From Macrostomum lignano (Eukaryota): a stretch of DNA of 64,000 nucleotides. Location: the NCBI GenBank assembly GCA_002269645.1, contig NIVC01000273.1:1-64000 (forward strand). Reading direction: 5' to 3'. Below the pieces are notes generated by a model. The model saw only the letters and a list, made by a program, of their open reading frames with translations, had not been told where the DNA came from and made no database searches. The position numbers and the translations under genes were made by a program. Position 1 is the stretch's first letter. The number at the start of each line of letters is the position of its first letter. This document shows, piece after piece, positions 721 to 58,218 of this stretch.

Positions 721-1692
721 CTTCGGGTGTGTCATAAGTAATGTCACTGCAGGCCTCTGTCTAAAATATGTAGGCACATGGACTTGTGGGTAGCGTAGCT
801 GCAAAGTATACTTAGTGAAGCAATACCAGTGCATTTGAGACGTGCATAGGTTGTTTATGGCCCAAGCTATCGCAAGAATACGCCAAGCAGATTTAGCAAG
901 TGCAACGCGATGAAAAATCGTCTATGCAGCGAACAAAAATCACCATGAATCTCGACAAGACGCCTGCATCAAGCAGATCCGCAAGGTGTTCAGCAGGCGG
1001 GGCTTGAATGACATCCTAAACTGCCTGGTTGCTGAGGATGAAAGCTGGCTCCACCTGGATGGCAAGGGCAGCAAGGCAGACAATCGCTGCTGGCTGGGAG
1101 CTGGGGACTCCAGGGCGACTGTGACCAGGAAGTCCATCTTGGACAAGAAGACCATGCTGCTGGTAGCCTTCACGCCAAACAAACGAGTCTCCATCTGCAC
1201 AACTCCACCGAACACCAAAGTCGATGGCCAGTATTTTATCGACTTTATACGGCACACTGGAGACCTCTGGCGCAATCTCCGGTCAAATCCATGTCACCTG
1301 GACGAGGTTCTGTGGCAGATGGACACCGCACGGCCGCACACCTGTAAGGCTTTTTCGAATTTTCTGCTTGCACGGCGAGTGAATATGCTCTGACAGTCCC
1401 AACAGCTCAGACTTCAACTTTTGCAAGAGATTCCTGTTCAAATGGCTGAAGGCTGATTTTTCCAAGAAGAGTTTCGCAAACCATGAAGAGGTCAAACAGG
1501 CCGCGTTGCACTGGTTACGGCAGTTGGAGGAAAAACACCTGCAGGCTGAGGTGGACAAGCTGTATGAGCACTGCCAGAGGGTGATTGATATTGGGGGACT
1601 CTATGAATTGTTGAGTGATACAGTTTTTTTCATCTGCGATTGCAAGTTCGTCTGTTTTCACATCAGTGACATTACTTATGACACACCCGAAG
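721..1692 (+). mobile_element. Internally deleted Tc1/mariner DNA transposon (972 bp)
   Basis: Perfect 29-bp TIRs CTTCGGGTGTGTCATAAGTAATGTCACTG (721-749) and its reverse complement (1664-1692), flanked by TA on both sides (719-720, 1693-1694); encloses a transposase remnant. Confidence 0.92.
986..1610 (+). pseudogene. Mariner-type DDD transposase catalytic-domain remnant
   Basis: AEDESW (first D), MDTARPHT (second D, cf. HDNARPH), then a stop at 1391-1393 and a frameshift into FLFKWLK...KLYEHCQRVIDIGGLY (mariner C-terminus). The SPDLxPxD motif is degraded and no HTH region is seen. Confidence 0.85.
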
Positions 1693-4272: not shown

Positions 4273-5188
4273 ATGCAGAACTTGGGGCCGCAACTCGGAG
4301 CGATAGGAGGCTCTCTGAGCAGCACCTGCCTTTGCGTCAAAGGCCTGAGTCCCGATAGCAGCGACCTCACTATTCGGCAACTGATGACTCAGGAAGCTGG
4401 AGTTCCCGATCACGCCATCGTGTATTCTCAGGCTATTTTAGACAAAACCACCGGCCATTGTAGAGGTTTGATTCCATTATATTATGTTTATGCTATTTTA
4501 TTGTTGAATGCATTTATGTTTACTCCTAAGACCATCCGCTAAACCCTAACCGACACCAGGCCTCGGCTTCGTTGAGTTTCAAAACGAGTCGCAGGCCAAC
4601 CAGGCTTTGGAGGCGATTCAGCGGCGGCCAGTGCAGGGCGATAGACGCTTGCAAATCGGATTCGCTCTTGTGAGTGCTAGTGTCATACGTCAGCAAACAT
4701 TTTCGTAGGGAAGTCCACAAAATATGAAAGTAAAGCTTATAGTTAAATCATTTTTAATGGCTATTCAATCTAAACAGGAGAACGAGAAGGATCTTACTAG
4801 CGTGTACTTGTGGAATTTGCCGGTGTCGTGCAGCGATTATTGGATTCGACAGGTCCTTGTCAATAGCCTCATCATGAACAGAAAGATTACTCAGCCGATT
4901 AAGTCCGTCAAGGCCCTTCCAGCCAATCCAAAGTACTCAATCGGATTCATTCGCTTCGGAGAAGAGAGCGATGCAGCAGCAGCGATTGAGTTCTTTATCA
5001 GAAACGGTCTCGAGTTCAGCTATCGGTTCGGATGCTCGGACCGGCTTGCGGCTAGACTGGCAGACAAAGCAAGCCCCAGAGCAAGGCTTGATCAGATCGC
5101 TCGGCTGTCTGCCAATCAGCGAGGGTCTATGAATGATGGCCGGTCAATGAGCTTTGAGGACATCGTAAAGCCGAATCCGGTTCTCTCT
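4273..5188 (+). CDS. Copy A: tandem RRM (RBMS/alan shepard-like) RNA-binding unit, exons 4273-4465, 4560-4669, 4778-5188
   Basis: GT-AG introns 4466-4559 (phase 1) and 4670-4777 (phase 0) join CLCVKGL...QAILDKTTGHCRG|LGFVEF (RNP2/RNP1) and VYLWNLP...SIGFIRF...RLAD. Donor GTGAGT at 5189. The same intron positions occur in copies B/B'. The 3' end is unresolved (a small exon may start at 5261). Confidence 0.8.
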
Positions 5189-5534
5189 GTGAGTCAACTC
5201 GATCTGCTGAATTTTAACTACAACTATAGAACGAATCGATTTAATCCTATTGTCTGACAGGGGAAGGCTTTGCAGAGCGATTCAAAAGCAGCAAAGTGCG
5301 TACATCATTGTGCTATGTGAAACACAGAAACAATCGCTTTAAAGCCCAGACAGGAAGTTAGAAAACAGATGCTGTGTTCCCTTATCCGTCGTACCAAGTA
5401 ACGTTGCTTTGTCACTAGGATACTCGAATGTACTCGTATATGATGCATTGTGCTTTTCTTTATCAATTCACCTATATGTACTTTATTCAACTTTATTTTA
5501 CCGATTATCCGAATTTAATTACTTTTTACATCAG

Positions 5535-8093
5535 GAAATCTCTGCGGAGCCACTCCAGCTAAAGGACGCTGAGAGCCCCTTCAAGTGGAATGCTCACGAA
5601 GGCTCACTAAGAACTCCAGAGGATGTAATTCGCAAACTGTCTGAAAAACTTAAGCTGGAGCCGATGCTATCCGCAGCGTATGGAGGTCTGCTTGCTGCTT
5701 ACCATTCTGCTGCTTCTCCAAGCCGCAAACTGATTGATTTTAGCAAGGCAAGAAAGCACCTGAAGGATGCAATAGAAGCTGCCAATAGTGCCCATCAACA
5801 TCACGTTAGGTGCGACTTTGTCCTGGAGGCCATCTCTCTTCATCTGGATCAACAACAAAAGAAAACGTCTCCTGAGTTCGATGAACGCGTAAAGGCTCTG
5901 GGTCAGGCTTGGAACGTTCCAGATAATGCACAGCGAATCGAAGTCAGAGCCAATGCATTTCACGTCAAGGCACTGGCACTGTTTAACCAAGGGATAGAGA
6001 AATACGTCCAGGCAGAGGAAGCTGTTAGGACCAGCTTGAGCTTGCGACCCGACAATTTCATGTGCGTCTACCTGCTGGCGTACATTTTAGCGCGCTTGCG
6101 CAGATACCGCAAAAACAGGGCTGCTGCGGGTCCAGAAGAGCTGCTCCTGTGGAAGCGGAGCGAGGAGCTCGCTAACTTGCAGAACCTGGACGATGCGCCC
6201 AAAGAAATTCGGCTGTATTACCAGCAGTTTTTAATTAACTATTCAGAGGCACTTTTGAATAACGCTGACCTAAAGGAAAAGTGCCAAAGCTTGGCTTCTG
6301 AAACGTTCCTGGCATTAAAGAACCTGAACGCAGAAGATTTAGAATGCCACTACCGAATCGCTCTCAAATGTGAAAAAGTGTTTCGAATTCTCAAATTGCA
6401 ATTGAATGACACTCAAACCCCACGAAGCATCTTACTCAGCCTAAAAGATGTAACAAAAAACTCTCAGTTATTTTTTTCATTGGCAAAACTGATGGAAAAC
6501 GAATCTGACTATGAAGAGTATGAGAGTTTGCTCGTCCGAGCTCAGCAGGTGGCGCCCGAGCCTGGACACATTTGGGTAGACGTGTGTTTGCAGGAATACC
6601 GAGAGGAAAGACCGAATGATTTCACTCACGAGTTTATTTTGGACGAGTTTGATACGATGATAGCCAAATACAAGGATAATTTTAGAAACAAGTCTGCAAT
6701 TCAGTATGCCAAGGGAGCCTACATGTGTCGGCGGCAGCTCGTTGACAGCGGCTTTGAGTCGATGGTCGAAGCAGTTCAAGTGTGTCCTGATGTCAGAGTT
6801 TACTTTCCTCCTTGGAAAAAAGAAAAAATATTGCAAATTCTATGCGAACGGACAGAAAGACCCGAACTGGAGGCTTGGTTCAGGCTGCACATCATGAACT
6901 GGGATTTTCAATCTACACAAATTATTTGCGAACGCTTTCAGAAGGCGCTGCAAAGTGAAAACTCGGATCACCAGCTGGTATATGAGCATCTTGGTCTGTT
7001 GTACTTTCGCCTTCGAGACTTTCAAGCTGCAGAAGAAAATTTCCGAAAACTTCAGTCTGAAAATCCTCGCAGAAACTCTCTGCTGTCGTCCGCTTTGCTC
7101 AAACGTGCCGAATCAAGAGATGAAGCTGAAAAGAGAGACTTGATTGTCGAGGCTCTCCGACTTGGAAACCCGGAGGCGTGCCAGCCCGCTCGACTCTTGC
7201 TGGACAACCGACTGGATCATCAGCTGCGGTTCCCTCTAGAAGCCATCAAGCAGAAGTACTGTCCTAAAGACCCCGAGAGTGAGATGCAGATCGTGCCGTG
7301 GCTGTTCAGCAAGGACTCGTACGAGCTGCTCGCTCTGATCAGCATCGCGTCAGAGAAGAACTATGAAAACTACTCAAAAACGTCGCCTCTGGTCCAGACG
7401 GATCTGCGGAAATCGAGACTGGCTCTGGAGCGTCTAGAGCAGCGCGGGAAACAGACTGAAAGCAAGTATTATAATGCCATCATGGAAACCCTGAAACTCG
7501 CAAAAAGTGCAATGGATGGATTAACTGCAAAACTGGATGGCTACGAAATGGAAAAGAAACTTGATTACTTCCCATACGGCTTCCGGTATATGACTGTAAA
7601 AAAGGATGAGAGCAAAAAGTTGATTTGCGGATTACAGAAACAAAGCCACGAAAATCGAAGAACGGAGATAAATAAGAAACTTTCAAATTTGCTCAAGTTG
7701 AAGGCATCCGCCACTGATGAAGCGAATCAGAGAGTAAATGCGCTCGTTGATTTGCTGAGCACTCGAGAATCAAAAGCGTTTCAGTTCCAGCAGCCATTTG
7801 CTTGGCTTGTGATCTGGCAGGAGTTGAGAAACAAAGCGGAGCACTCGAGCGCACAGAAGCCCATGAAGACTTTGATTCCAGAGTTATTGGAGGCCTGGAA
7901 CTGCGACCCAGATTGTGCTGGAAGCGTCGCGCACATGGCTGCGGAGTTCGCTGAGGAGACACGACTGATATTCGAGGCCGAGACTGAGGCGCTTCGAGCA
8001 GCCACTGGTAAGACCGGAGTACCAGTAGAAGATTTGAACTCAGCCCAGTCGAGACCCACCAAGAAGTTTTTGGCTTTGCATCTTTCTGACTGA
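5535..8093 (+). CDS. Copy A: single giant exon, IFIT-like TPR protein with C-terminal HEPN-like domain (852 aa)
   Basis: Uninterrupted ORF beginning at a polypyrimidine/CAG acceptor (AG|GAA ATC). TPR motifs include YEHLGLLYFRLRDFQAAEENFRKL and AEEAVRTSLSLRPDNFMCVYLLA. RNKAEH at 7827-7844; stop at 8091-8093. Confidence 0.8.
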   Translation, partial: EISAEPLQLKDAESPFKWNAHEGSLRTPEDVIRKLSEKLKLEPMLSAAYGGLLAAYHSAASPSRKLIDFSKARKHLKDAIEAANSAHQHHVRCDFVLEAISLHLDQQQKKTSPEFDERVKALGQAWNVPDNAQRIEVRANAFHVKALALFNQGIEKYVQAEEAVRTSLSLRPDNFMCVYLLAYILARLRRYRKNRAAAGPEELLLWKRSEELANLQNLDDAPKEIRLYYQQFLINYSEALLNNADLKEKCQSLASETFLALKNLNAEDLECHYRIALKCEKVFRILKLQLNDTQTPRSILLSLKDVTKNSQLFFSLAKLMENESDYEEYESLLVRAQQVAPEPGHIWVDVCLQEYREERPNDFTHEFILDEFDTMIAKYKDNFRNKSAIQYAKGAYMCRRQLVDSGFESMVEAVQVCPDVRVYFPPWKKEKILQILCERTERPELEAWFRLHIMNWDFQSTQIICERFQKALQSENSDHQLVYEHLGLLYFRLRDFQAAEENFRKLQSENPRRNSLLSSALLKRAESRDEAEKRDLIVEALRLGNPEACQPARLLLDNRLDHQLRFPLEAIKQKYCPKDPESEMQIVPWLFSKDSYELLALISIASEKNYENYSKTSPLVQTDLRKSRLALERLEQRGKQTESKYYNAIMETLKLAKSAMDGLTAKLDGYEMEKKLDYFPYGFRYMTVKKDESKKLICGLQKQSHENRRTEINKKLSNLLKLKASATDEANQRVNALVDLLSTRESKAFQFQQPFAWLVIWQELRNKAEHSSAQKPMKTLIPELLEAWNCDPDCAGSVAHMAAEFAEETRLIFEAETEALRAATGKTGVPVEDLNSAQSRPTKKFLALHLSD

Positions 8094-8984
8094 AAGCTTT
8101 GTTTATCTATTGACCATTTCTGTGTTTTCGCTTGAGGCTTTTCTGAATTATGTACCGACAATGTTGCATGTAGTGTCCTGAACGGCGCGTTCAGACCGGA
8201 TACTGACTGGAATATGACTAACTACTGACTAAAGTTGCTGCTGCCCGAACGCTTTTTTTATTTACATGTACTCCCGTACTCAGTCTCGGCACCCGCTGTA
8301 GATTTTTAAGGGTTTTTAGCGTTGACAGTTTCGTATTTGCTTTGCTTTTTAACTTCGACCTGTTTCGTTATTTTTTCTTACCTAACAAATTATGTAATTT
8401 TCCCTTTGACCAAGAAGTGCACTGTTGTGCAGCCTTCATGTACTTTTATTAATTTTGTCTTTTGCGAGTTTAAAATCACTTTCCAATTTTTTATTAATTT
8501 GCTCATTGAAGTTACTCTTAGCAGGTCCTGGTTTCTTCTGAGTTCGAGCAACTTCTCGCTTCATTCATTTGGCCTAATATATAAGGTGTGATAAAATTCC
8601 ATTGCCGTTTTTAATTGAAGCACGCAGCCACACACAACGCTGCTGAACCAACATGGACTTTTAGCTATAAGTACGAGCTATTAGATTCCTTGATTGACTT
8701 TTGTAAGCCCTCAAAATTTTTGTACGCTTATGTTTTTCATGTACTAGGCTTTTTGGCTCTCTTTAGGCCTTTCTAAATCCCACTGATATGCCACCAAAGC
8801 TGTCCAATGGGTTACTTCGGCCATCTAAGTCAATTCACAACGTCACCACAAAGTAACAGTGCTTTGCTTTTCTTATTAAATCCAACTGTTGATACCAAGT
8901 TGTGCTACTGCTGTTAACTGTTTCTTAGAATCAGTCTGTGAATTAGTCGCTTAGTACATTTTGAAAGTATTCAACGTATATAGT

Positions 8985-9716
8985 CTGGTAGCGTCTAATG
9001 TATTATTCTGGTAGCGTTCACTATATAAGTCTGGTAGCGTCTATTGTATTATTCTGGTAGCGTCTATTGTATTATTCTGGTAGCGTCTATTGTATTATTC
9101 TGGTAGCGTCTATTGTATTATTCTTGTAGCGTCTATTGTATTATTCTTGTAGCGTCTATTGTATTATTCTTGTAGCGTCTATTGTATTATTCTAGTAGCG
9201 TCTATTGTATTATTCTGGTAGCGTCTATTGTATTATTCTGGTAGCGTCTATTGTATTATTCTTGTAGCGTTTATTGTATTATTCTTGTAGCGTCTATTGT
9301 ATTATTCTGGTTGCGTCTATTGTATTATTCTGGTAGCGTCTATTGTATTATTCTGGTAGCGTCTATTGTATTATTCTGGTTGCGTCTATTGTATTATTCT
9401 TGTAGCGTCTATTGTATTATTCTGGTTGCGTCTATTGTATTATTCTGGTTGCGTCTATTGTATTATTCTAGTAGCGTCTATTGTATTATTCTTGTAGCGT
9501 CTATTGTATTATTCTGGTAGCGTCTATTGTATTATTCTTGTAGCGTCTATTGTATTATTCTGGTAGCGTCTATTGTATTATTCTGGTAGCGTCTATTGTA
9601 TTATTCTTGTAGCGTCTATTGTATTATTCTTGTAGCGTCTATTGTATTATTCTGGTAGCGTCTATTGTATTATTCTTGTAGCGTCTATTGTATTATTCTG
9701 GTAGCGTCTATTGTAT
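8985..9716. repeat. 23-bp minisatellite, ~32 copies
   Basis: Unit GGTAGCGTCTATTGTATTATTCT with few variants (CTTGTAG, CTAGTAG, GGTTGCG) and no spacers. Confidence 0.95.
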
Positions 9717-22589: not shown

Positions 22590-23249
22590 TGTAGAAAAAC
22601 TAACGATTGAATTACTGCTGATTTTGAATTGAATAGAAAAAGGAAAAGACCAGGCTTGAGAGCCAGCCCTCCATGCAGCGTATATTATTTATAAAACTAA
22701 CGTAGGGGGTTGAGTCGAGAATAATAAAGGGAGGGGTGGAATAGATAAGAAACCAATTTGGGGGGGGGGCTAGTCGATCGATAAATGGTGGAAGAGAGAA
22801 AACGCTAACAATGTACAAACAGCTGAGAGAGAGGGAGAAAATTAAACAAGGCTAGGCGATAGAGTGAATTATTCCAAGGGCAAAATATTGTGAAACAGAA
22901 TTTCGCGACAAGGATAAAGGCAAAGCACAAAAGAAAAAAAATTTTTTAGCCAAGTATGCCAACGCTGAGTGACAGAACAAGTAAGGGCCAGAGCGACCCC
23001 AACCCCAACCACCTCACACCACGCACACTGCAGAGGGCAGAGCACAGACCATACTCGTATAGAATATAGACTGCGAATCTGCGAGACTCAAGCAGACCAG
23101 TGCTTGAAATTTACTTATTACGTCATTATATAGACTTTTAAAACCTCAGGGAGGCAAAATGAATATTTCCTTGCAAAAATATCCCGCAAAAAACTCAAAC
23201 AAGCATTCTTATCAATACAATCAGCTTCTAGCGTATCGAAAAAAAGAGA

Positions 23250-24005: not shown

Positions 24006-25577
24006 TGTATTGACAGTAATAACCAAGCCTAATATTGATACTACCAATAAAAACAACCGTGTGTATTTCTCGCACGTTAGCGTCTAACTTAGCGAGCTGT
24101 CTCTCTTTTAATCCAGCTCAACTTCAGCTCGCAGGCTTGCCCATAGATATAGTTCGTACTAAAAGGCATACATATCATTCCTCCTTTTCTTTAAAAAAAA
24201 TTGTTCAGTCAAAACAGTTCAGTTCAGTTAATTCGCAACAAAAAAATCCGGTTTCTTCAGTTTTGACCGGTCACGCAAAACACGTTGGTTCGGATGCTGT
24301 TTCACATCTTGGCCGTCCTTTGGCTTGATATCGAAGCTTGATGACGCGGCTAACTTTCGAGTTTTGTCTATGGCCCGCGAAGACTTGCCAGTCTGACCAT
24401 GATGCTCTAGATTTGGTCCCGTCGATTCAGCTTCCTCTTTTGCATCCTTTTTCAACTTGTAGCTATTCTTGGCATTGTGTGCTTGCGTTAGTTCTGTGTC
24501 GAAATCACACTGTGGCTGGGGCACAACTTCGGTTTCAGATTTGATCAGATGATCCACGTGTCGTTTCCAGATTTGTCCGTTGACTTCCACGTGGTAGGAC
24601 AGCGGCCCAGTCTGTTTCAACACTTTGGCTTGAGCCCACTTGTTTTCTTTTTCCATCCTGAAATCAAAAACTAGCACTATATCTCCAGCCTGAAACTCTC
24701 GGTGAGGAATATGTTCCCGGCGCATCATCTGCTTACTTTGCGAATCCAGGACTCTCCCGTATGTGTCTGGCTTCAGGAAGTCCAGCCTTGTCCGTCTTGC
24801 ATACGCAAGCATCATCTCGGCAGGTGACTTGCCCGTTGTGCTATGAGGCGTGCTTCTATAGCGGAATAGGAAATTGTGCAGGCTCAGCATGGCATCACCG
24901 TGGCTCTTCATGCCTGCTCTGATCGCATTCTTGGCTGTTTGAACCATTCGCTCACTGAGCCCGTTGGTTCTTGGATGTCCTACAGCACTGAAGATGTGAT
25001 GGATGTTATTTCGCTTGGTGAATTCAGCAAACTCCTGTGATGCAAACTGGCTTCCATTGTCGGTCAGTATCTGTCGAGGTATTCCAAACCGAGCAAATGT
25101 CTCTCGAAAGCGTTGAATGGTGTTCGCGGCACTGGCAACTTTCATTGGAAAAACCTCTACCCATTTTGATGTGGCATCTACGATTACCAACCAATTGAAT
25201 CCGAAACACGGTCCGAAAAAATCTGCCTGAAGTCTCGTCCATGGCTTTTCTGGCCAACTCAACGGGTGAACAGCAGATTCTGGTGGTTTGCTTCGCTGCA
25301 GTTCGCATCCCTTGCATTGTTTCACAGCTCTTTCAATCTGTTGGTCGATTCCCGGAAACCAAACGTGCAGGCGAGCGATCGATTTCATCGATACAATCCC
25401 AGGGTGTCCTTCGTGCAGCAGGTCCAAAACTTGGTGTTGGAGGCTAGATGGAATGATGGCGCGTATACCCCAGAAGATGACTCCCTGCTCAAGACAGAGT
25501 TCGTTTCCTTTCTGACGGTATATCTCAAGCTCAAATTCACATTTCTCCGGCCAACCGTTCTGGCAGAACCTGATTAC
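24006..25577 (-). mobile_element. 5'-truncated Gypsy/Ty3 LTR retrotransposon (integrase, PPT, short 3' LTR)
   Basis: PPT AAAGAAAAGGAGGAA followed by TGATATG... (LTR ~24177-24006 ending ...CAATACA); pol is truncated at 25577 exactly where the B' duplication begins. Confidence 0.8.
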
Positions 25578-25607
25578 CTGCGGGGACAGACAGCATCGGC
25601 AGAGCAT
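24228..25607 (-). CDS. Gypsy (Mag/K02A2.6-like) integrase ORF, 459 aa; the first 10 codons come from the duplicated segment
   Basis: HHCC finger LHEGHPG...CKGC; catalytic ADFFGP, TDNGSQF, NGLSER; no internal stops. Confidence 0.88.
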   Translation of the reverse strand: MLCRCCLSPQVIRFCQNGWPEKCEFELEIYRQKGNELCLEQGVIFWGIRAIIPSSLQHQVLDLLHEGHPGIVSMKSIARLHVWFPGIDQQIERAVKQCKGCELQRSKPPESAVHPLSWPEKPWTRLQADFFGPCFGFNWLVIVDATSKWVEVFPMKVASAANTIQRFRETFARFGIPRQILTDNGSQFASQEFAEFTKRNNIHHIFSAVGHPRTNGLSERMVQTAKNAIRAGMKSHGDAMLSLHNFLFRYRSTPHSTTGKSPAEMMLAYARRTRLDFLKPDTYGRVLDSQSKQMMRREHIPHREFQAGDIVLVFDFRMEKENKWAQAKVLKQTGPLSYHVEVNGQIWKRHVDHLIKSETEVVPQPQCDFDTELTQAHNAKNSYKLKKDAKEEAESTGPNLEHHGQTGKSSRAIDKTRKLAASSSFDIKPKDGQDVKQHPNQRVLRDRSKLKKPDFFVAN

Positions 25608-25699
25608 TCAGTTCGGCAGCTTTATAATTTTTGATAGCTTGTGCAGGACAGGAGGTGTCGTCTGTGCAGTGTTGGGCAACTTCAATTGGTGCTTTGGCC

Positions 25700-28192
25700 T
25701 CACTTAGTGGTTGCTTTTTGAAGCTCCTCAGTCTCGGCCTCGAATATCAGTCGTGTCTCCTCAGCGAACTCCGCAGCCATGTGCGCAACGCTTCCAGCAC
25801 AATTTGGGTCGCAGTTCCAGGCCTCCAATAACTCTGGAATCAAAGTCTTCATGGGCTTCTGTCCGCTCGAGTGCTCCGCTTTGTTTCTCAACTCCTGCCA
25901 GATCACAAGCCAAGCAAATGGCTGCTGGAACTGAAACGCTTTTGATTCTCGAGTGCTCAGCAAATCAACGAGCGCATTTACTCTCTGATTCGCTTCGTCA
26001 GTGGCGGATGCCTTCAACTTGAGCAAATTTGAAAGTTTCTTATTAATCTCCGTTCTTCGATTTTCGTGGCTTTGTTTCTGTAATCCGCAAATCAACTTTT
26101 TGCTCTCATCCTTTTTTACAGTCATATACCGGAAGCCGTATGGGAAATAATCAAGCTTCTTTTCCATTTCGGAGCCATCCAGTTTTGCAGTTAATCCATC
26201 CATTGCACTTTTTGCGAGTTTCAGGGTTTCCATGATGGCATTATAATACTCGCTTTCAGTCTGTTTCCCGTCCTGCTCTAGTCGCTCCAGAGCCAGTCTC
26301 GATTTCCGCAGATCCGTCTGGACCAGAGGCGACGTTTTTGAGTAGTTTTCATAGTTCTTCTCTGACGCGATGCTGATCAGAGCGAGCAGCTCGTACGAGT
26401 CCTTGCTGAACAGCCACGGCACGATCTGCATCTCACTCTCGGGGTCTTCAGGACAGTACTTCTGCTTGATGGCTTCTAGAGGGAACCGCCGCTGATGATC
26501 CAGTCGATTGTCCAGCAAGTGTTGAGCGGGCTGGCACGCCTCCGGGTTTCCAAGTCGGAGAGCCTCGATAATCAAGTCTCTCTTTTCAGCCCCATCTCTC
26601 GATTCGGCTCTTTTGAGCAAAGCGGACGACAGCAGAGAGTTTCTGCGAGGATTTTCAGACTGAAGTTTTCGGAAATTTTCTTCTGCAGCTTTGAAGTCTT
26701 GAAGGCGAAGGTATAACAGACCAAGATGCTCGTACACCAGCTGGTGATCCGAGTTTTCACTATTCAATGCTTCGGTATAGAGCTGAACAATTCTCTGTGG
26801 TTCATCTGACTGCAAGTCAAGGTCCAGCATATGCTGCTGAAACCAAGCCTCGAATTCGCATCTGTCAGTCTTCTGGCTCAGATTTTTTAGCGTCTCATCT
26901 TTTTTCGATTTATGGATATGAAGTCGAACCTCAGGATAGACCTGCACCGCTTTGACCATTTCTTCAAAACCATCAGCAACGCTCTCTGTTTCAGAAAAGG
27001 TCATCATAAAGGCTCCCTTCGAGTATAGACAAACGGCTTCGTACCTGGGATAATCCTGATGATATCTTTCAGCGAGAGTGTCATACTCATTCAAAATATC
27101 GACGGCCGAAAACTTGTCGCTTCTTTTTTGTTTGAAGTTTTGATAATAAATATCAACCCAAATGTGTCCAGGCTCATAGGACAACTCTTGGGCTTTTATC
27201 AGCAGCTCTTCGCACCTTTCATCTTCTTTTTTCTCTTCAGCCAACATCGCTAATCTGAAAAGCAGATCAGAATTTTTAGTACCCTTCTCTAGGCGTTGCA
27301 ATATTTCCTGGAGTTCCTGCGTTTCTGGATGCTTGCGAATCTGAAAGATTTTTTCACACCTGAAGACAATTCGGTAATGTTCATCCAATACCTGAGTACT
27401 TATGTTTCTCAATGCTTGGTACGTGGCATTCGCGAGTTCCAGGCACTTGTCTTCTAAGCTCCGGTTGTTCAAAATAGCCTCCGCATAGTTTATTAAAAAC
27501 TGATAGAAGTACATTTTTGTTCCTTCATTCTTATACTGCCACCGGTGTTCATTTGCCAGATCATATGCACGATTCCACAGGAACAACTCCTCTGCATCAG
27601 CAGGCGTTCTGTTGTTGTGATGGCGACGCATCCGCGCACGAATATACGCCAGCAGGTAGATGCACATGAAGTTATCCGGTCGCAAGCTCAGACTTGCTTT
27701 CACAGCTTTCTCTGCTTCATCGTACTTTTTTATACCTTGGTGAAAAAAGTCCAGAGCTTTAACGTGAAAAACGTTGGCTCTGATCTCGATGCGCTTGGCC
27801 TCATCTTGAGTGTTCCAGATCTTGTTGAGGGCCTTGACGCGTTCAGTGAAGTTGAGTTGGTTCCGGCTCTGCTTAGCATCCAGGTTTAACTCAATGGCTT
27901 GCAAGACGAATTCGCATCTGACATGACCTTCATCTGCGTCTTTGCCATAGTCTACTGCGCTCTTCAAGTATTCCCTTGACTTTCTGAAGTCGATATGCTT
28001 ACGCCGATCGAATCTGGTTCCGTGATAAGCAGCCAGGAGGCCTTGATAAGCCGATGAGAGCATTGGCTCAAGTTTCAGTCGGTCCAAAATTGTGTCGATC
28101 ACATCCTCTATATTTTTGTCGGAGCCATCGTATGCGCACCATTTGAATGGGTTTTCGGCGTCTTTCAGTTCGAGTGGTTCCTTTGTGATTTC
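25700..28192 (-). CDS. Copy B': intact IFIT-like TPR-HEPN giant exon (830 aa)
   Basis: Acceptor AG|GAA ATC ACA at 28192; open to the TGA at 25700-25702; RNKAEH at 25871-25888. Confidence 0.82.
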   Translation of the reverse strand, partial: EITKEPLELKDAENPFKWCAYDGSDKNIEDVIDTILDRLKLEPMLSSAYQGLLAAYHGTRFDRRKHIDFRKSREYLKSAVDYGKDADEGHVRCEFVLQAIELNLDAKQSRNQLNFTERVKALNKIWNTQDEAKRIEIRANVFHVKALDFFHQGIKKYDEAEKAVKASLSLRPDNFMCIYLLAYIRARMRRHHNNRTPADAEELFLWNRAYDLANEHRWQYKNEGTKMYFYQFLINYAEAILNNRSLEDKCLELANATYQALRNISTQVLDEHYRIVFRCEKIFQIRKHPETQELQEILQRLEKGTKNSDLLFRLAMLAEEKKEDERCEELLIKAQELSYEPGHIWVDIYYQNFKQKRSDKFSAVDILNEYDTLAERYHQDYPRYEAVCLYSKGAFMMTFSETESVADGFEEMVKAVQVYPEVRLHIHKSKKDETLKNLSQKTDRCEFEAWFQQHMLDLDLQSDEPQRIVQLYTEALNSENSDHQLVYEHLGLLYLRLQDFKAAEENFRKLQSENPRRNSLLSSALLKRAESRDGAEKRDLIIEALRLGNPEACQPAQHLLDNRLDHQRRFPLEAIKQKYCPEDPESEMQIVPWLFSKDSYELLALISIASEKNYENYSKTSPLVQTDLRKSRLALERLEQDGKQTESEYYNAIMETLKLAKSAMDGLTAKLDGSEMEKKLDYFPYGFRYMTVKKDESKKLICGLQKQSHENRRTEINKKLSNLLKLKASATDEANQRVNALVDLLSTRESKAFQFQQPFAWLVIWQELRNKAEHSSGQKPMKTLIPELLEAWNCDPNCAGSVAHMAAEFAEETRLIFEAETEELQKATTK

Positions 28193-28803
28193 CTGAAATC
28201 AATTATTGGACAGTCAGTTAAGGTTTTGATTAATTATCCTTTTGAGAAATTCTCTTTAAGTAGAGTATGCTGTCTAATAGTAGGAGAAAGACGAATCGCT
28301 CCGGCCCTTTTAGCGTGACTTTAACAATATACATAGCAATAGTAATATGCTATAGTCTTCTCAATTGTCATATCAATGCATTAACGAGCTACTACTCAGC
28401 ATTATTCCCCTCAGTGCCACTCTGCATCATTCTCCTACTGTATTAACCTTCAGACTTTGCAAGTATCGAATGAGATAAGCGATAAGGATTCAAAGAACCA
28501 CAGCAGCATCTCAGCTGACAGCAGCTGCAAGTTGCATTAACATGTACTCGTATTTTGTAAGCTTGGTCAGTTCGTACTATTAGTATGAGGCTATATTAGA
28601 GCATTTATATCTTAATACGAGCTATCTAGCGCATATCACTAGTCTGGTGTAGGGTAAAACCGAGGCTTGCTTGACTTAGCCTGCAGAATAGGTTTGATGC
28701 AATCAAAAGGCTAAACGGTGTCCTTTTAGACTCGCTTTACTTAGGCAGCTACCCACCTCCAACCCTAATTACAATTGGGTAGTACAGCCATGAGGAAACT
28801 TAC

Positions 28804-30697
28804 AAGAAGATGCGCGCTCGGCTTCACAATATCTTCAAGGCAGACTGGTCGACCACCGACATCACGGGTCTTTTTTTCAGATTTTTTTTCTGAAAATTTA
28901 GCAGCAAGCCGCCCAGAGCATCCATATTTGTGGGAGAGCCTTAGCCCATTGTGATTGATGAGTTGGATAACACATGAAGCACTGTCCTCTGTTGTAAATT
29001 TCACAATGCCTGTTGAATAATATGGGTTAGCACGAAAAATCCTGAATGACAAGATCGTATCCTCGCAACAATTGCATTCGTATAGTAGAAACTGTCTAAT
29101 CCACTCTATCGTGCAGTTGACAGGCAAATTCCATACGAACATCTCTTTGCCGTCCTTTTCTGCCTCCTGTATTTTGTACACGGTGGGTGCTCGGCATTGC
29201 ATTTGAAATGCTGCGCTATCAGAAAGTTATGTCTAAAAAATATCGAAGACTCACCCGAGCGAATTCGACCTTCAATTTTTCCTGGCTGGCATGTTTCGTG
29301 TCTTGCAGCTGCTGAATATTTCTTACTGCCATCTTTGCCCGCTCTGTGTTTCGAAGTTCAGCGAAGCCGATCCCTAAATGTGAGTGAAAGTTCTCGTTCA
29401 CTTTTCTTGCTCTTCGACTACAGTTTCTTTGTTCTGAAGCCTTAATTTTTTTGGTTTGAAAGTGAGTACTAGTAGTTCACTATCATACGAGTATTATTTA
29501 TCATGATCTATTATAGTAGTTAGGTAGGTACTCACAATTAAATATTTTAAATTTGCATCGCTAATTTAGGGGTTGTAGACTAGTGGTCGACTGAAAGGTC
29601 GGGGCTTCGATTTTCTACTCACTTGGAACAATTTGTGTCCTTGAGCAAGACACTTGACTATGCATTGTTTCAGTTCACCCAGCTGTAAAATGGGTGCCAG
29701 CATTAGCTGGGGTAATTGAGGGTGCGTGGCGAGGTATCCAGTCAATCCGGCGACAGGACGATCCGGCGACAGCCAAAACAGCGACAGTCAATCCGGTGAC
29801 AATTCGTAGTAAAACCCTATTACATGTAAACCGGCTATTGTTACTTAAACAGATTAGAGAGAGCTCTGATTTTTATAATTATTACAATTGCTATTATTGT
29901 TATTAGTTATTATTATTTGATTTTTAATAGAATGTATGCAGGAATAGCTCCGATAATTGGAATTTAGCGGGTTCAAAATGCGCGGATTTCTGTCAACTAT
30001 TAACATATTGTTTTCTTATAATGATGATACATGTACATTTACATGTATTGCTTTAAAAATGGGAAACTGCATTAAATCATTTATTTTCACTAGGCCGCAC
30101 ACTAGTTTTTCATCTGCAGTTTGATGTGACACGGCCTAAACTGTCAGAAGTACGGACATAATGTACCATTTTTATTAGAAAATATACTGGTCGTCTAAAG
30201 TGAATTATTTACATGTAAAATTAAAATAGAGTTCATGTAAAGTTTTATTTGTATCTAAAATCCGTAAAATCTACTATACAAAATCTGTCGCCGATTTGAC
30301 TGTCGTCGGATCGTCTGGAAGCCCGTGGCGACCCCCCCCCCCTCAGTCCTTGGACTGAAAAACTGCTCAATAGCTGCGGCTATAAATTATACGAGTATAT
30401 ACGTCGCATATTATTACAATCGCAAACTAATGCACTTGGCATACTTTGCATGATAAAACAGACTACATAAGAAATTGAAATCGCACCTTTACACTGGCCA
30501 GATTGCGAATCCAAGATGGCTTGAGCAAACACTATGGAGTGATCAGGAACTCCGGCTTCGTGCGCAATGAGCTGCCGAATTTTCAGATCTGTTGTGCCGG
30601 GAGACAAACCCCGGATGAAGATTCGGGTGCTGGACATGCGACTGTTGCTGTTGGAGTCACTGGCGGGCGCACTGGCGGCGGACGATGAAGCTTGCAT
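28804..30697 (-). CDS. Copy B': tandem RRM unit, exons 30697-30487, 29373-29255, 29166-28804
   Basis: Same exons as copy B at offset 13978/13979. Confidence 0.8.
29568..30364 (+). mobile_element. CORE-SINE with nested MITE (29733-30323), duplicate of 15590-16385
   Basis: Same TSD CGTGGCGA and TIRs as in copy B. Confidence 0.7.
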
Positions 30698-33600
30698 CCT
30701 GAAGCTGTGTTGAGGAACACCTTAACTCTTGGAAGGATGTAGAGTAGAGCGAGCTTGTGTGCTTTGGGTTTGGGGTTAGCTCTACTCATAAGGCCCAGTC
30801 AAGGAGTTCTTAATTTAGCAAGTTTCAAATGGACACTCACGGGGGGGAAGAAACCGATAACAAATATGGCCGCTTGAAAAAGGCTCCTTTGCTTCCCATC
30901 CCTCAGTTCCGCCTTCCCTGCCGAGGCCCGCCTCCATCTCTGGGCCTGCCCAACTCTCCAAAATGTACAGGGGAAACCTAGACCCTAAGAGTTAAATGGG
31001 CTAGTTAGTACGAATTGAGGAACGGAGGAACCGAAAGCAAGCTGGTGTACGTCTCTGGTGTACAACCCCCGTGACCACAGCACTGGCCGTATTTATTGGG
31101 AAAGGGTTTCATTGGGGATTCACTATACTATAGGCCCATAGTGCATCAATGTAAACTCACTTGACTTATCACTGAACTTCTTGGCCAGGGAATACTTTAA
31201 ATATGTATGTAACTCTCCCCACTGCGGTCGGGGCAACCCTGCAACCCACGCCGAGTCACTCCCAAGAGCCAGCCAATTCCTTACTTAGCCCCAGGCCGAG
31301 AATTTATCCATATCCAAGTTTTGAAGCTTTAAAGGCGTCGTTTTACAAGGTCGAAATTTCATAAGGAGGAAAACTACTTCATCGTTCTTGTCAAATACAT
31401 TTTCGTACTGTCCTTGTGAAATTTGACCTTATGAAGTCCCTTTGCTAGAGTTTTCGATGTTGTGAAATTTCGACCTTATGAAGGAATGTGCTTTCGACGT
31501 TGTGAAACTTCGAGTTTGTGAAACCCCTCCAATTCAAATACTAGTGGACCCAAAATCAGGCAACAAAATTTACAATTAAAATAGCTAATTTGACAGAAAT
31601 ATATCGCATCCCACATACCGTAAAGATACTCTGTGATGGAGACGAATAGAAGTAAATTGCATGCAACACAGTAAATAAAAGGCTTCAAGATACTTCGAGG
31701 AGTTATTTAAACAGGATTTAATGAAATTATTTAAAATTTTATTTTCATTTACCTATAAGGTTTTAACGTAAGCTTGAAGGATTCAAATTGGCTGGCTTGC
31801 GAACACTTGCAGTCGTTTTATTTCGATCTGAGATGTGGACTTGCGCTTGCCAACGAGCAATGGCCGATTAGTCGTAATTAGCAAAGTGGCGTTCTTCTAA
31901 TAAATGAGTTCTAAGTTCCAATAGAAGATAAGGGAAAGAAAGAAGACATGAGCGTGCATGAATAACGGCCGAGAGAGCAGACACATGTGTACAGATTTTA
32001 CATTATACGACGACTTTTTAGGCCAGCGATATTTACCTTTCTATTCATTTTATGGCAACGCATGCTCTTCGCACTGTCACTGTCCTTTCTGTGCCTAATC
32101 TTTTCTGAAGAGTGAACACTAGACATTTTCATAAGTATTCTGGTCAAACCGAGTTTTACTCAGTTGGTCCCATAGATCTTATATTCCTATCATAGATCTG
32201 TTAAAAGGTAAAGGTGTACGAGACGTCGTATGGTTTTGGTTGGTCCTCAGTTTAAAGTCGAATTGAATTCTCCGTAGCTCTGTCAAAAAATCTTTTGACT
32301 CCGTATTTTGTTACCACTTGTGTTGGCGGTAAGGCGTTAAAACTGTGGGATGAGCTGGCTTGGGGTTGGTGTATTAGGAGGCGGGCTTCGGTGTTATGAA
32401 TTTTATGAAGTGTCGGTCTTGTGAAGGATCATGCAGTAGTTTTCGACGCTGTTAAATTTCGGTCTTGTGAAGGCAGGTGTCTTTCGGAGTTATAAACTTT
32501 GGTCTTATGAAATTGACCCTTTATTCCTGTCTCATTTTGTGACCCTAAGATGTCTTGTCTTCTCAGATTTTTTCTTTCGCTTTTCTTTATCTGACTGATA
32601 ATTGTTTCGCAACCATAAATTCGCTTGCAAGTGGCACTGAAAGCTAGCTTGTTTATTGTTCTTACGTGTATATTCTATAAGGACTGATTCAAGTGCCTGT
32701 GGGTTAACGCTCCACCAAGCTCAGTGAGCAAAAAATACGAGCGTAATTTCTTCCCGTGAATACAATGTGCCAGACCTGCTGAGTGAGTACCGCGATGAAA
32801 AAGCTGCTGTGCCAATATCAGACGGCTTAGACGATGCTACAGGTGGGAAACTCTGGTGCTCGACCTCGACGGGGTGCTGCTCTTCCCACCAATGATGACG
32901 GCTTTCGGTTGTCGGAGAGTCGGCTTAGCATGGTTGGCTGCGTCGAAAAGCTCTGCGCAGAAGACCTCTGTGCTCTGCGTTGCAGACGACATCAAAACTG
33001 ATATCATCTGCCGAGGCGCTGAGTTCAGCAGTTCTTCTACCTTGGCTGCCTGTTTCAGGGCCGTCGGTGGAAATCTGCGGCGTCGCCGCGGGCTTGCCTG
33101 GGCTCGCTTTCTTAAAGCGACGCCAATCCTGCAGTTCGAGACAGAGAGCGACGTTTGGTCAGGCGGTGGTCGAGGCCATGCTGTTTTAAACGTCGAAACC
33201 TGGACGCTGACGGGCTCGTTCGAACAGCATCTTGAAGGCACACGCACCGCCTATAGTATGCTCCTGTTATACTAGAACGTGCATACGAATAGCATTAGCA
33301 GTAGAACTACAATCCCCCTAACAATTGTTTTTGCTGCGCCGGAACGGAGCAACGTCGGCACACAAAATTCAAGAACACGGAGTAACTTCTTGTTCCGCAC
33401 TTTCTCAAACAAGAATAAATACTCGATACAGATATTCGACGATTCTGCCAAAAGGTCGGATTTTTTCATAAGTGCCAGTGTATTCAGTACACCCCTGCGT
33501 GCGCAAATCAGCACTGCGCCTCAGTGCAGCCTTGCCAAGCCTCCAAAATTCGTTTGCACATCGATCACATGTGTCTGCATCAGCTCTGACTTCGTTGATC

Positions 33601-36489: not shown

Positions 36490-38310
36490 CTTAGAAAGCA
36501 GATTCTTATGTCCCACCAGATAGGCTAAAACACCGTCTCATAGCTGAATTTGAAAAGTTTATCTGTAAAGCTCAAGGATACGTTAAAAAGAGGAGCAATA
36601 GACTTGTGCACCAGGCTATGAACGGCCTTAAGAACAATGAAAATATCAAGATTGTTGGCTTTGATAAAGGCTATGGCGTTGCTGCTTTAGATAGTAAGGA
36701 TTATTTTGACAAACTTGAGAAAGTGATCCAGGACAAACTCAAGTTTCAATGCCTTGCTACCGATGATCAAGTCACTATGGCTCACCCGGTTTAAAAAATG
36801 AGAAATCTCTTCAGAATTTTTTGAGAACTTACGTTAAGCCACACGTGACCCCTGAGATCTTTAAGTTGATTGTCCCAAATGGTAGCCAACCTGGACAATT
36901 TTACGGTCTGTGCAAAGTTCATAAGGATGGTCACTCTTTAAGACCTATTGTTTCGATGATCAACACTTCGGAGTATGAGCTAGCTAAATTCCTTGACAAT
37001 TTAATTAAACCTGTTATCCCTTCTGAGCACTGTGTGAGTTCCAATCAACAGTTTATCGAGAGCCTCAGCAATACCACGATTAATCAAACTGACAGGCTTT
37101 ATAGTTTTGATGTTGTTTCACTGTTCACCAACATCCCTCTCGAATTCACCATTGAGCTGGCTGCTGATCTTGTGTATGAAAAAGCCAATCCACCTCCTTT
37201 CTCTAAAGCCACTTTTAAGAAGATGCTCGAATTCGCCACCTCCGGCATCTTTCTTTTTCGGGACAAATATTACAGACAGATTGATGGGTGTGCCATGGGC
37301 AGCCCTCTCGCCCCAACCCTCGCTAATTTGTGCATGGCCCACTGGGAAAAGGACTGGATGGCCCTCCCTTGTGCGCCTCACTTCTACAAACGCTACGTCT
37401 ATGACACGTTTGCGATCTTTGAGGACGAAGCTAAGAAGGACGAGTTTTTTAAGTTAATCAATTCTACTCATGACAATATCAAATTCACGGTGGAGGGGGG
37501 AGGCAGAAGACTTCCTTTCTTAGACATTGACGTTGACGCCACCGATGAAACTATTTCGACCAGCGTGTATAGGAAACCTAGCTTTACCGGGCTTATGCTT
37601 AGGTTTGACGCCTTGTGCCCTAGACAATGGAAAACCGGATTGATTCGTGGCTTTCTTCACCGGGCTTTTTCCACTTGCAGCCCTTGGAGACGTTTCCACA
37701 ACGAAGTTGAAATCCTCACCAATCTGCTCAGCTACAATGGCTATCCTAAGAACTTTGTGATGAAAATTGTCAACTCTTTTCTCAATGACAAACTGACTGA
37801 ACCTACTCGGATGAAAGTTCGTGATTCCACATCTGAATGTCCCTTGATCACTTTGCCTTACTTTGGTGTTTGTTCTGTAGAGTTTAAAAAGAAGTTAGAA
37901 AAGCTGCTCCGTAAAGACTTCAACACTCAAATCCGTGTTGTGTTTCGCACCGAAAAGATTGCTAAGTTCGTCTGCAAGTTGAAATCCAGTGTTCCACGTC
38001 CTCTCGCGGCTGGTGTCGTGTATAAATTTGTTTGCTCTGAGGACCAGAGCATCTCCTACATAGGAAAAACTAAACGACACTTATGCACGAGGGTCAGAGA
38101 GCACTGGCTAAAAACTCTGCTAATAACGAACACCTGCTAACCTGCAACTCTTGTTGTGAAACCACACGAAATGATAAAGGCTATTGATTTTTGTAATAGA
38201 GATCACATGCTCTGCCTATTAGAAGCCCTGTACATTAAGACCAAACAGCCCACGTTAAATAACCAACTTGCGATGGGTGGGGCCAGCCGTCAACTCAGAA
38301 TTTTTTAGCT
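36490..38310 (+). mobile_element. Penelope-like retroelement (RT + GIY-YIG endonuclease), decayed
   Basis: ORF 36821-38140: FYGLCKVHK, LRPIVS, SFDVVSLFTNIP, QIDGCAMGSPLAP, LPFLD, VYRKP, VVYKF..C..YIGKTKRHL.TRVREH; the catalytic YVDD reads YVYD (37394-37405). Confidence 0.92.
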
Positions 38311-58209: not shown

Positions 58210-58218
58210 TTAAGAGAA

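What the first reader, a model, noticed from the sequence alone, without database searches (positions are those of the whole stretch)
7460..7990. HEPN-like effector domain with an intact R-N-x3-H motif
All three copies encode ...IMETLKLAKSAMDGL...DYFPY...FQQPFAWLVIWQELRNKAEH (A 7827-7844; B 11894-11911; B' 25871-25888). RNxxxH preceded by an upstream Glu in a helical domain is the HEPN consensus. The LAKSAMD / YFP / QP..WL..L.N..H series also recalls, from memory and unverified, a bacterial HEPN-like family (LRSALD...YFP...QPY..WL..L.N.DKH). That raises possible deep homology or horizontal origin of the effector.
Basis: partly seen in the sequence, partly recalled or inferred. Interest (0 to 1): 0.8.

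Follow-up and report, generated by a model that had tools for sequence, protein, structure and literature searches.

The report
Flatworm RRM–TPR gene's unassigned C-terminal domain
The RNKAEH motif is real, but it is one recently copied sequence at the end of a gene family found only in the flatworm Macrostomum lignano, and no search or model run here could show that the domain is a HEPN RNase or has any bacterial relative.

Summary
RNKAEH is encoded at all three stated positions.

The three occurrences are not independent:
- B and B' are a 5.2 kb duplication, 99.67% identical.
- A shares only its last 1042 nt with them, at 97%. The rest of the gene has saturated synonymous sites, so the shared tract looks like gene conversion.

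The window is Macrostomum lignano DNA. The genes have four exons with GT-AG introns. They encode two N-terminal RRM-type modules, about 550 aa of degenerate TPR-like helices and a helical C-terminal domain of about 240 aa.

Nothing places that domain in HEPN:
- There was no hit in Pfam, PADLOC, NCBIfam or PHROGs at E<=10, and none in PDB sequences.
- An exhaustive HMMER scan of 1.84 billion representatives found only the family itself.
- Both AlphaFold models are unreliable (pLDDT 42 and 50), and Foldseek found nothing significant.

No relative was found in bacterial or archaeal genomes, plasmids, metagenomes or viral contigs.

Some weak evidence favours HEPN. The motif ends a predicted helix and precedes a loop. 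An Ex3R lies in the preceding helix. The ~100 aa core is under purifying selection.

A TPR-like hairpin with a capping helix fits equally well, and it is equally unproven.

Verdict: cannot tell. HEPN probability is about 0.25. A bacterial origin is unsupported.

The parts
4273..8093 (+). Gene A, intact. It has four exons (about 4273-4465, 4559-4669, 4778-5188, 5535-8093) encoding RRM modules, a TPR-like region and the C-terminal domain.
   Evidence: tblastn of M. lignano proteins P0002-P0004 gives 100% identity on exon 1. Intron borders are GT-AG. There is no stop in 5535-8090. Pfam RRM_1 scores 36.4 bits on P0004.
5535..7283 (+). TPR-like helical region of gene A, within the last exon.
   Evidence: Pfam TPR_8/TPR_2/TPR_1 hits fall below the cutoff in A. 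The homologous unit of B/B' scores TPR_8 33.4 bits, above the 25.7 cutoff. PDB profile hits are generic TPR proteins only (TOM71, E 2.6e-4). This region is 58% identical to B'.
7284..8093 (+). C-terminal helical domain of gene A (243 aa shared with B/B' plus a 26-aa tail and the stop). It has no family assignment.
   Evidence: Searches gave no hit.
7683..7988 (+). Most constrained core of the C-terminal domain in copy A (residues 134-235 of the 243-aa domain). It contains the Ex3R (DEANQR) helix, the RNKAEH helix and the terminal helices.
   Evidence: Window A against the L001 B-like copy shows 6 synonymous and 1 non-synonymous differences, pN/pS 0.04.
7827..7844 (+). RNKAEH hexapeptide, copy A.
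6954..7995 (+). Tract of gene A that is 97% identical at nucleotide level to B (11743-12783) and B' (25720-26761). Inferred to be gene conversion.
   Evidence: Inside the tract dS is 0.065. Upstream of it dS is saturated and dN is 0.37.
11723..16718 (-). Gene B, with the same four-exon structure as B'. Its reading frame is broken once, by a single-base indel relative to B' that could be an assembly error.
   Evidence: In the last exon there is one indel event and one substitution against B'. Exons 1-3 are identical.
11894..11911 (-). RNKAEH hexapeptide, copy B.
25700..30697 (-). Gene B', intact. Exons are 30697-30485, 29374-29255, 29169-28804 and 28192-25700.
   Evidence: P0005 is 100% identical over exons 1, 2 and 4 and 99% identical over exon 3. 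There is no stop in 25703-28192. Introns are GT-AG.
25703..26431 (-). C-terminal helical domain of B' (243 aa). This was the query for most searches.
25871..25888 (-). RNKAEH hexapeptide, copy B'.
11601..16802 (.). Segmental duplication unit, first copy. It is 99.67% identical to 25578-30774.
25578..30774 (.). Segmental duplication unit, second copy.

Best explanation
The finding lies in the last ~240 codons of a gene family known only from the flatworm Macrostomum lignano. Each gene has four exons and encodes one Pfam-recognised RRM, a second RRM-like module, about 550 aa of degenerate TPR-like helical hairpins, and an all-helical C-terminal domain.

The identical RNKAEH in three places is one sequence copied. 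B and B' are a recent segmental duplication. The 3' kilobase of A has been homogenised with B, apparently by gene conversion.

My most likely reading is that the C-terminal ~110-125 aa is a selectively constrained helical extension of the TPR scaffold. It would be a helix, a loop, a short helix, an Asp-Pro-Asn turn and a long terminal capping helix. On this reading RNKAEH sits at the end of an 'A' helix by chance. The protein would then work as an RNA-binding adaptor: the RRMs hold RNA, and the TPR solenoid with its C-terminal helices holds partner proteins or mediates self-association. It would not itself cut RNA.

Shown here: the gene structure, the copy relationships, the restriction to M. 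lignano, the constraint on the core, and the absence of any family match.
Inferred: the TPR-like nature of the C-terminal hairpin, and the adaptor mechanism.
For: - Organism and family: the only database relatives are M. lignano 'RRM domain-containing' proteins. The exhaustive HMMER scan finds only their cluster.
- Gene models. RRM and TPR hits.
- Copy relationships.
- Constraint on the core: 6 synonymous against 1 non-synonymous difference.
- No HEPN hit in any library.
- Secondary structure of the core is H56-70, loop, H77-87, turn, H92-124.
- By eye, the segment W-Q-E-L-R-N-K-A-E-H-S-S-G matches the published TPR A-helix consensus AEAWYNLGNAYYKQG at W4, L7, N9 and G15. The helix after it ends in D-P-N, like the published P-N-N inter-repeat loop (PMC4871810).
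- The same protein has recurrent 'A-x-x-x-x-P' helix-B ends upstream, and another Rx4H (RANxFH) inside a TPR helix.
- The only weak PDB sequence hits to the motif region are designed helical-repeat or helical-bundle proteins.
Against: - The TPR-like reading is not statistically supported. hhalign of the core against the family's own TPR region gives E 0.16-0.23. Smith-Waterman against shuffles gives P 0.06-0.7. Pfam TPR models do not hit the C-terminal 104 aa even at E<=10.
- In either register a bulky residue (Arg or Trp) falls on TPR position 8, which is Gly in the published consensus.
- RNx3H is expected only 0.008 times in a domain of this size.
- The motif's position at a helix end, the Ex3R one helix upstream and the ~100-120 aa size all fit the HEPN description in PMC3710099.
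- The adaptor mechanism is inference from domain types alone.
Confidence: 0.5

Rival explanations
1. The C-terminal ~120 aa is a very divergent, lineage-specific HEPN domain. The helix with DEANQR would be helix 2, carrying the Ex3R acidic residue. The helix ending in RNKAEH would be helix 3, and the terminal kinked helix would be helix 4. Two copies would dimerise to form a composite, metal-independent RNase site. The RRMs would deliver RNA and the TPR region would regulate or oligomerise. The family would then be an RNA-targeting effector, possibly against transposon or viral RNA.
For: - The motif is Rx4H with Asn after Arg, the commonest HEPN form (PMC3710099; PMC9646362).
- The motif lies at the end of a predicted helix, followed by a Gly/Pro-containing loop. 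PMC3710099 places it there.
- An Ex3R lies in the preceding helix.
- The constrained core is about 100 aa, the typical HEPN size.
- RNx3H is expected 0.008 times per domain by chance.
- HEPN domains are fused to TPR repeats in animal DZIP3-like, C6orf70 and bacterial LA2681 families (PMC3710099, Table 1).
- RNA-binding domains, repeats and HEPN co-occur in lineage-specific invertebrate expansions (PMC8195603).
- The genes sit among retrotransposons and show copy turnover.
Against: - No match to any HEPN family model or HEPN structure sequence.
- Foldseek has no significant hit. A HEPN toxin appears only at E about 9-10, TM 0.29, on a model of pLDDT 50.
- R/H conservation cannot be tested because all known copies are at least 88% identical.
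- Ex3[KR] is common in this domain (7 occurrences).
- Rx4-6H occurs by chance elsewhere in the same protein.
- The D-P-N turn and the surrounding pattern fit a TPR-like hairpin equally well.
- DZIP3-like HEPN domains sit at N-termini in the described oyster architectures (PMC9646362), not at C-termini.
Confidence: 0.25
2. The domain derives from a bacterial HEPN-like family, either by deep homology that is still visible in sequence or by horizontal transfer.
For: Nothing found here supports it.
Against: - phmmer of the 243-aa domain against 1.84 billion representatives returned only the M. lignano cluster, plus two low-complexity repeat proteins that are spurious.
- No relative was found in 185,579 bacterial and archaeal genomes, plasmids, JGI metagenomes, viral contigs, PADLOC, NCBIfam or PHROGs.
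- The domain is part of a GT-AG-spliced eukaryotic gene, in the same exon as the TPR region. Its GC content matches its surroundings.
Confidence: 0.02
3. The family is decaying, and the C-terminal domain has no maintained function. The motif would be a neutral relic kept identical only by recent copying.
For: Several copies are broken or truncated:
- B has one frameshift.
- The A-like copy in L001 has one premature stop inside the domain.
- Database model P0001 leaves the frame inside the domain.
- pN/pS is above 1 in the first 100 codons of the domain when the stop-bearing L001 copy is compared.
Against: - A and B' are intact over about 830-850 codons.
- The TPR part shows dN far below a saturated dS.
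- The core shows 6 synonymous against 1 non-synonymous change. Under neutrality about 79% should be non-synonymous, giving a binomial P of about 5e-4 (my calculation).
- The single-base indel in B may be an assembly error.
Confidence: 0.1

Closest known systems
DZIP3/hRUL138-like HEPN proteins of animals (Pfam PF18738), which show lineage-specific expansions in oysters and cnidarians
   Same: - An animal protein in which a putative Rx4H (Arg-Asn) module is combined with TPR repeats.
- A lineage-specific multi-copy family with copy turnover.
- An RNA-related context (PMC3710099 Table 1; PMC9646362).
   Different: - No PF18738 hit even at E<=10.
- The module is C-terminal here, whereas the oyster architectures have it N-terminal.
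- There is no RING, NACHT or Death partner domain.
- RRMs are present instead, an architecture not listed in PMC3710099.
- PMC9646362 reports zero copies of this family in the flatworm Schistosoma mansoni.
KEN-domain RNases (Ire1, RNase L)
   Same: A eukaryotic HEPN-type helical domain at the C-terminus of a multidomain protein, with an Arg-Asn...His catalytic motif. In it the residue after Arg contributes to catalysis (PMC3710099).
   Different: - No kinase or pseudokinase domain lies upstream.
- No sequence match to any PDB chain, although Ire1 and RNase L structures are deposited (PMC3710099 cites 3lj2).
- No Pfam hit.
- The circular permutation typical of KEN could not be assessed.
TPR proteins with a C-terminal capping ('solvating') helix, including RNA-binding TPR proteins such as IFITs
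   Same: - A long array of degenerate TPR-like hairpins.
- The last hairpin is followed by a D-P-N turn and one long terminal helix, like the A-B-loop-cap layout of consensus TPR proteins (PMC4871810).
- The protein is RNA-associated through its RRMs. I cite IFITs from general knowledge as a functional analogue only.
   Different: - The C-terminal hairpin is not recognised by Pfam TPR models.
- It has no significant similarity to the family's own TPR units.
- It carries a bulky residue at TPR position 8 and about three extra turn residues.
- No PDB TPR or IFIT chain matches beyond a generic single repeat.

Membership tests
HEPN superfamily | Rx4-6H motif with a polar residue (N/D/H) immediately after Arg | tested here: met
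   R-N-K-A-E-H is present in all window copies and in both L001 copies. By itself it is only mildly above chance.
HEPN superfamily | The motif's Arg and His are conserved across divergent family members | tested here: inconclusive
   All known copies are 88-100% identical in this domain, and nearly every residue of the core is invariant. No homologue exists outside M. lignano.
HEPN superfamily | [quoted passage not shown] | tested here: inconclusive
   DSSP of the models puts the motif at the end of a helix followed by a loop. The models have pLDDT 42 and 50.5, so the tertiary fold is unknown. Foldseek gave no hit with E<1.
HEPN superfamily | Upstream conserved acidic residue, typically Ex3[KR], in helix 2 | tested here: inconclusive
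E146-x3-R150 lies in the helix preceding the motif helix. However, seven Ex3[KR] occur in the domain against 3.7 expected.
HEPN superfamily | Significant sequence or profile match to any described HEPN family | tested here: not met
   None in Pfam-A, PADLOC, NCBIfam or PHROGs at E<=10. None in PDB sequences by phmmer or hmmsearch. Power is limited, because the profile contains only near-identical sequences.
DZIP3/hRUL138-like HEPN (PF18738) | Match to the family profile | tested here: not met
   No PF18738 hit for the whole protein or for sub-segments.
KEN domain (Ire1/RNase L) | C-terminal extension of a protein-kinase or pseudokinase domain, with a match to the KEN profile or structures | tested here: not met
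   Pfam finds no kinase domain in the gene product. No PDB sequence match.
   Searches found none.
TPR repeat proteins | At least one repeat above the Pfam gathering score in the central region | tested here: met
   TPR_8 scores 33.4 bits against a 25.7 cutoff in the B/B' product. NCBIfam MamA (a TPR protein) matches at E 1.8e-7. PDB TOM71 TPR matches at E 2.6e-4.
TPR repeat proteins | The RNKAEH-bearing C-terminal hairpin is itself a TPR unit | tested here: inconclusive
   By eye it matches the published consensus at W4, L7, N9, G15 and the P-N loop (PMC4871810). There is no Pfam TPR hit. Internal-repeat tests are non-significant.
RRM proteins | RRM_1 profile match above the gathering score | tested here: met
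   P0004 (A-type) scores 36.4 bits and P0001 (B-type) 29.8 bits against a 20.7 cutoff. Their N-terminal exons map to the window at 100% and 94-98% identity. The second RRM-like module is not recognised by Pfam.

The most novel reading that the evidence does not exclude
The C-terminal ~120 aa is a new HEPN RNase family restricted to Macrostomum and invisible to current profiles. It would be joined to RRMs and a TPR array in an architecture not catalogued for HEPN. The family would be a flatworm-specific RNA-cleaving effector, possibly directed at transposon or viral RNA, that evolves by duplication and gene conversion.
Probability: 0.25. Interest if true: 0.55.

Novelty: new member of a known kind. 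Interest (0 to 1): 0.3.

Why it matters
If the domain were a HEPN RNase, it would add a new, taxonomically restricted HEPN family and a new RRM–TPR–HEPN architecture. It would also give a regenerating flatworm model a candidate RNA-targeting defence or regulatory nuclease.

As things stand, the finding is an uncharacterised orphan domain in a lineage-specific RNA-binding TPR protein family. It is of modest interest.

Two points are worth keeping. A short catalytic-looking motif repeated in paralogues is not independent evidence when the paralogues are being homogenised. And this locus shows a clear gene-conversion tract with a sharp boundary inside a coding exon.

Tried and rejected
1. Word-indexed protein searches with the C-terminal domain, as an alignment and as a single sequence, returned nothing at E<=10. 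They missed even the paralogues found. I treat them as uninformative and rely on the exhaustive HMMER scan.

2. The one search hits P0006 and P0007 are rejected as spurious. P0006 is 5020 aa with 17 weak stretches against a ~200-aa repeat. P0007 is a short-period repeat protein. The scores are summed low-complexity or repeat matches.

3. AlphaFold2 on the 243-aa domain (pLDDT 42) and on the 126-aa core with three near-identical rows (pLDDT 50.5) gave models too poor to interpret beyond helix positions. Foldseek on both gave only E>=1.1 hits to miscellaneous helical proteins. The HEPN-toxin hits at ranks 19 and 27 are noise, and I do not count them.

4. I tested whether the C-terminal domain is an internal duplicate of the preceding TPR units. 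Co-linear alignments recur, such as DYFPYGFRYM against the Pfam-positive TPR, and NKKLSNLLKLKASATDEANQR against NSLLSSALLKRAESRDGAEKR. They are not significant (E 0.16-0.23; shuffle P 0.06-0.35).

5. I considered an IFIT-like identity for the TPR part because of an F-K-W pattern near its start. No PDB IFIT chain is hit, so I dropped it.

6. The supplementary HEPN alignments of PMC3710099 are not held as text.

7. Weak Pfam hits (PhaP_Bmeg, Baculo_FP, MOLO1; E 0.03-0.1, all below cutoffs) are chance.
Full report
**What is at the coordinates**

The hexapeptide RNKAEH is encoded at 7827-7844 (+), 11894-11911 (-) and 25871-25888 (-), exactly as reported. The stated start, 7460, is one base out of frame.

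All three sites lie at the 3' end of long open reading frames:
- A: 5409-8093 (+).
- B: the 11723-14124 region (-).
- B': 25700-28102 (-).

**Organism and gene family**

The only relatives of the 800-aa B' product in a 5.8-billion-protein collection are five Macrostomum lignano entries named 'RRM domain-containing protein'. Mapping them back to the window gives four-exon genes with GT-AG introns:
- A: 4273-8093 (+).
- B: 11723-16718 (-).
- B': 25700-30697 (-).

The products have four parts:
- An N-terminal RRM, with Pfam RRM_1 above its cutoff.
- A second RRM-like module that Pfam does not recognise.
- About 550 aa of degenerate TPR-like helices. Only one unit passes a Pfam TPR cutoff, and PDB hits are generic TPR proteins.
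- An all-helical C-terminal domain of about 240 aa with no family assignment.

**The three copies are not independent**

B and B' are a 5.2 kb direct duplication, 99.67% identical. They are separated by an LTR retrotransposon and an integrase fragment. In the last exon they differ by one single-base indel, which breaks B's frame and could be an assembly error, and by one substitution.

A is an old paralogue. In the TPR part its synonymous sites against B' are saturated and dN is 0.37. From 6954 to 7995, however, A is 97% identical to B and B' at nucleotide level, with dS 0.065. This sharp switch inside a coding exon indicates gene conversion of the 3' kilobase. 'Present in all three copies' therefore counts as one observation.

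**Is the motif more than chance?**

Shuffling shows RNx3H is expected 0.06-0.07 times per last-exon product and about 0.008 times per 243-aa domain. The generic HEPN pattern Rx4-6H occurs 3-6 times in the same product, at chance level. One instance, RANxFH, sits in a TPR helix and is conserved between the old paralogues.

An Ex3R (E146-R150) does lie in the helix before the motif helix. But seven Ex3[KR] occur in the domain against 3.7 expected.

**Tests of the HEPN assignment**

No HEPN family, and no other family, matches the domain or its sub-segments:
- Pfam-A, PADLOC, NCBIfam and PHROGs gave nothing relevant at E<=10.
- No PDB chain matches by phmmer or by a profile. A 65-aa query centred on the motif weakly hits only designed helical-repeat or helical-bundle proteins.
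- An exhaustive phmmer scan of 1.84 billion representative proteins returns the family's own cluster and two repeat proteins whose scores are summed low-complexity matches.

AlphaFold2 models of the 243-aa domain and of the 126-aa core have mean pLDDT 42 and 50.5. Foldseek on them gives no hit better than E 1.1 and 2.6. A bacterial HEPN toxin appears only at ranks 19 and 27 with E about 9-10 and TM 0.29, which is noise.

The structural hits are non-HEPN, but the models are unreliable. There are also no homologues from other species.

**What does speak for HEPN**

PMC3710099 gives these HEPN features:
- A domain of about 100-120 aa.
- Rx4-6H with a polar residue after Arg.
- An Ex3[KR] acidic residue in helix 2.
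- A frequently kinked helix 4.

The predicted helices fit this pattern: 2-24, 28-41, 56-70 ending in RNKAEH, a loop, 77-87, a turn, and 92-124.

A second genomic sample was informative. It is L001, from M. lignano assembly GCA_002269645.1, and it holds an A-like and a B-like copy.
- RNKAEH is intact in both copies.
- Core residues 134-235 show 6 synonymous against 1 non-synonymous difference between window A and the L001 B-like copy. About 79% of changes would be non-synonymous under neutrality, so the core is under purifying selection.
- Residues 101-133 of the B-like copy are an old, diverged patch (pS 0.5). A more distant paralogue therefore exists or existed.

HEPN domains are fused to TPR repeats in several families (PMC3710099, Table 1). 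Lineage-specific invertebrate expansions combine RNA-binding domains, repeats and HEPN RNases (PMC8195603; PMC9646362).

**The rival structural reading**

The same segment can be read as the last TPR-like hairpin plus a capping helix.
- W-Q-E-L-R-N-K-A-E-H-S-S-G matches the published TPR A-helix consensus at W4, L7, N9 and G15.
- The next helix ends in A-x-x-x-D-P-N, like the consensus P-N-N loop (PMC4871810).
- About three extra turn residues are present, as tolerated in FIS1 (PMC10641528).
- Upstream units of the same protein end in similar A-x-x-x-x-P turns.

This is a resemblance seen by eye, not a test. hhalign against the family's own TPR region gives E 0.16-0.23. Smith-Waterman against shuffles gives P 0.06-0.7. 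Pfam TPR models do not hit the segment. A bulky residue also sits at TPR position 8.

**Bacterial or horizontal origin**

No relative was found in 185,579 prokaryotic genomes, plasmids, metagenomes, viral contigs or the 1.84-billion-protein library. The domain shares an exon and its base composition with the TPR part of a spliced eukaryotic gene.

**Weighing**

I combined the following by judgement:
- the rarity of HEPN among eukaryotic helical domains;
- the modest likelihood ratio from the motif and its helix-end position;
- the negative profile searches;
- the TPR context.

This gives about 0.25 for a divergent HEPN RNase, about 0.5 for a non-catalytic helical extension (TPR-like) in an RNA-binding adaptor, about 0.1 for a decaying family without maintained function, and 0.02 for a bacterial origin. 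The remainder goes to some other fold.

Some family members are broken:
- one frameshift in B;
- one premature stop in the L001 A-like copy;
- a database model that leaves the frame inside the domain.

A and B' are intact.

**Novelty and interest**

The gene family is already in databases as uncharacterised RRM proteins. The C-terminal domain is an orphan. Without orthologues or a reliable structure, the HEPN idea remains a plausible but unproven lead, so interest is modest (0.3). The decisive evidence is descriptive: orthologue sequences from other Macrostomum species, a profile-profile comparison built on them, and a confident or solved structure.

Noticed in passing
window 6954-7995 vs 11743-12783 and 25720-26761: There is a sharp gene-conversion tract. 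Paralogues A and B/B' are 97% identical over the last 1042 nt of the coding exon, but have saturated synonymous divergence immediately upstream (58% aa identity). The tract ends about 20 nt before the B/B' stop codon, after which A continues with a different 26-aa tail.
   Followed up: yes
window 17143-22910: A BEL/Pao-type LTR retrotransposon lies on the minus strand between the two duplicate units. Its 323-bp LTRs are 98% identical. Pfam finds Peptidase_A17, Integrase_H2C2 and DUF5641. The gag-pol reading frame is split into five consecutive ORF pieces in alternating frames, so at least four frame changes. No reverse-transcriptase domain was detected at E<=1e-3, which suggests an internal loss.
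   Followed up: partly
window 24228-25607 (-): A 459-aa open reading frame encodes only a retroelement integrase (Integrase_H2C2 plus rve). It starts 93 nt downstream of the B' stop codon and overlaps the edge of the 5.2 kb duplication by 30 nt. No matching LTRs or other pol domains were seen next to it.
   Followed up: partly
window 8976-9716: A 23-bp minisatellite lies in the A-B intergenic region, with 32 copies, 94% matches and strongly negative AT skew. A 40-bp repeat (3 copies) lies at 11293-11422.
   Followed up: no
window 39950-58210: An ~18 kb block of nested repeats has very strong negative GC skew (down to -0.57). Units of about 1-1.5 kb are 75-93% identical to each other, and contain 16-31-bp and 110-171-bp sub-repeats. 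Long + strand ORFs in it (for example 55514-56704 and 50497-51282) have no Pfam match.
   Followed up: partly
window 36821-38140 (+): A 439-aa ORF has a reverse-transcriptase domain (RVT_1, 34.7 bits). It probably belongs to a non-LTR or Penelope-like retroelement. Its boundaries were not examined.
   Followed up: no
window 62466-62865: A 57-bp tandem repeat (7 copies, 93% matches) lies inside overlapping + strand ORFs (62375-62988). It may be a coding repeat.
   Followed up: no
L001 13012-13818 (+) and 18552-19277 (-): A second M. lignano assembly (NIVC01004067.1) carries the same tail-to-tail A-like/B-like gene pair. The A-like copy has one premature stop inside the C-terminal domain. The B-like copy carries an old diverged patch (domain residues 101-133, pS about 0.5) inside otherwise near-identical sequence. 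This mosaic implies a more distant, unsampled paralogue.
   Followed up: partly
window 5946-5963 (+) in A; homologous position in B/B' (residues 138-143 of the last-exon product): A second Rx4H (R-A-N-x-F-H) is conserved between the old paralogues A and B. It lies in a helix of the TPR-like region. This shows that such motifs occur in this protein's repeat helices without any HEPN context.
   Followed up: partly
window 986-1393 (+): An ORF whose translation looks like a fragment of a mariner/Tc1-type DDE transposase, judged by eye. Pfam gave no hit at E<=1e-3.
   Followed up: no
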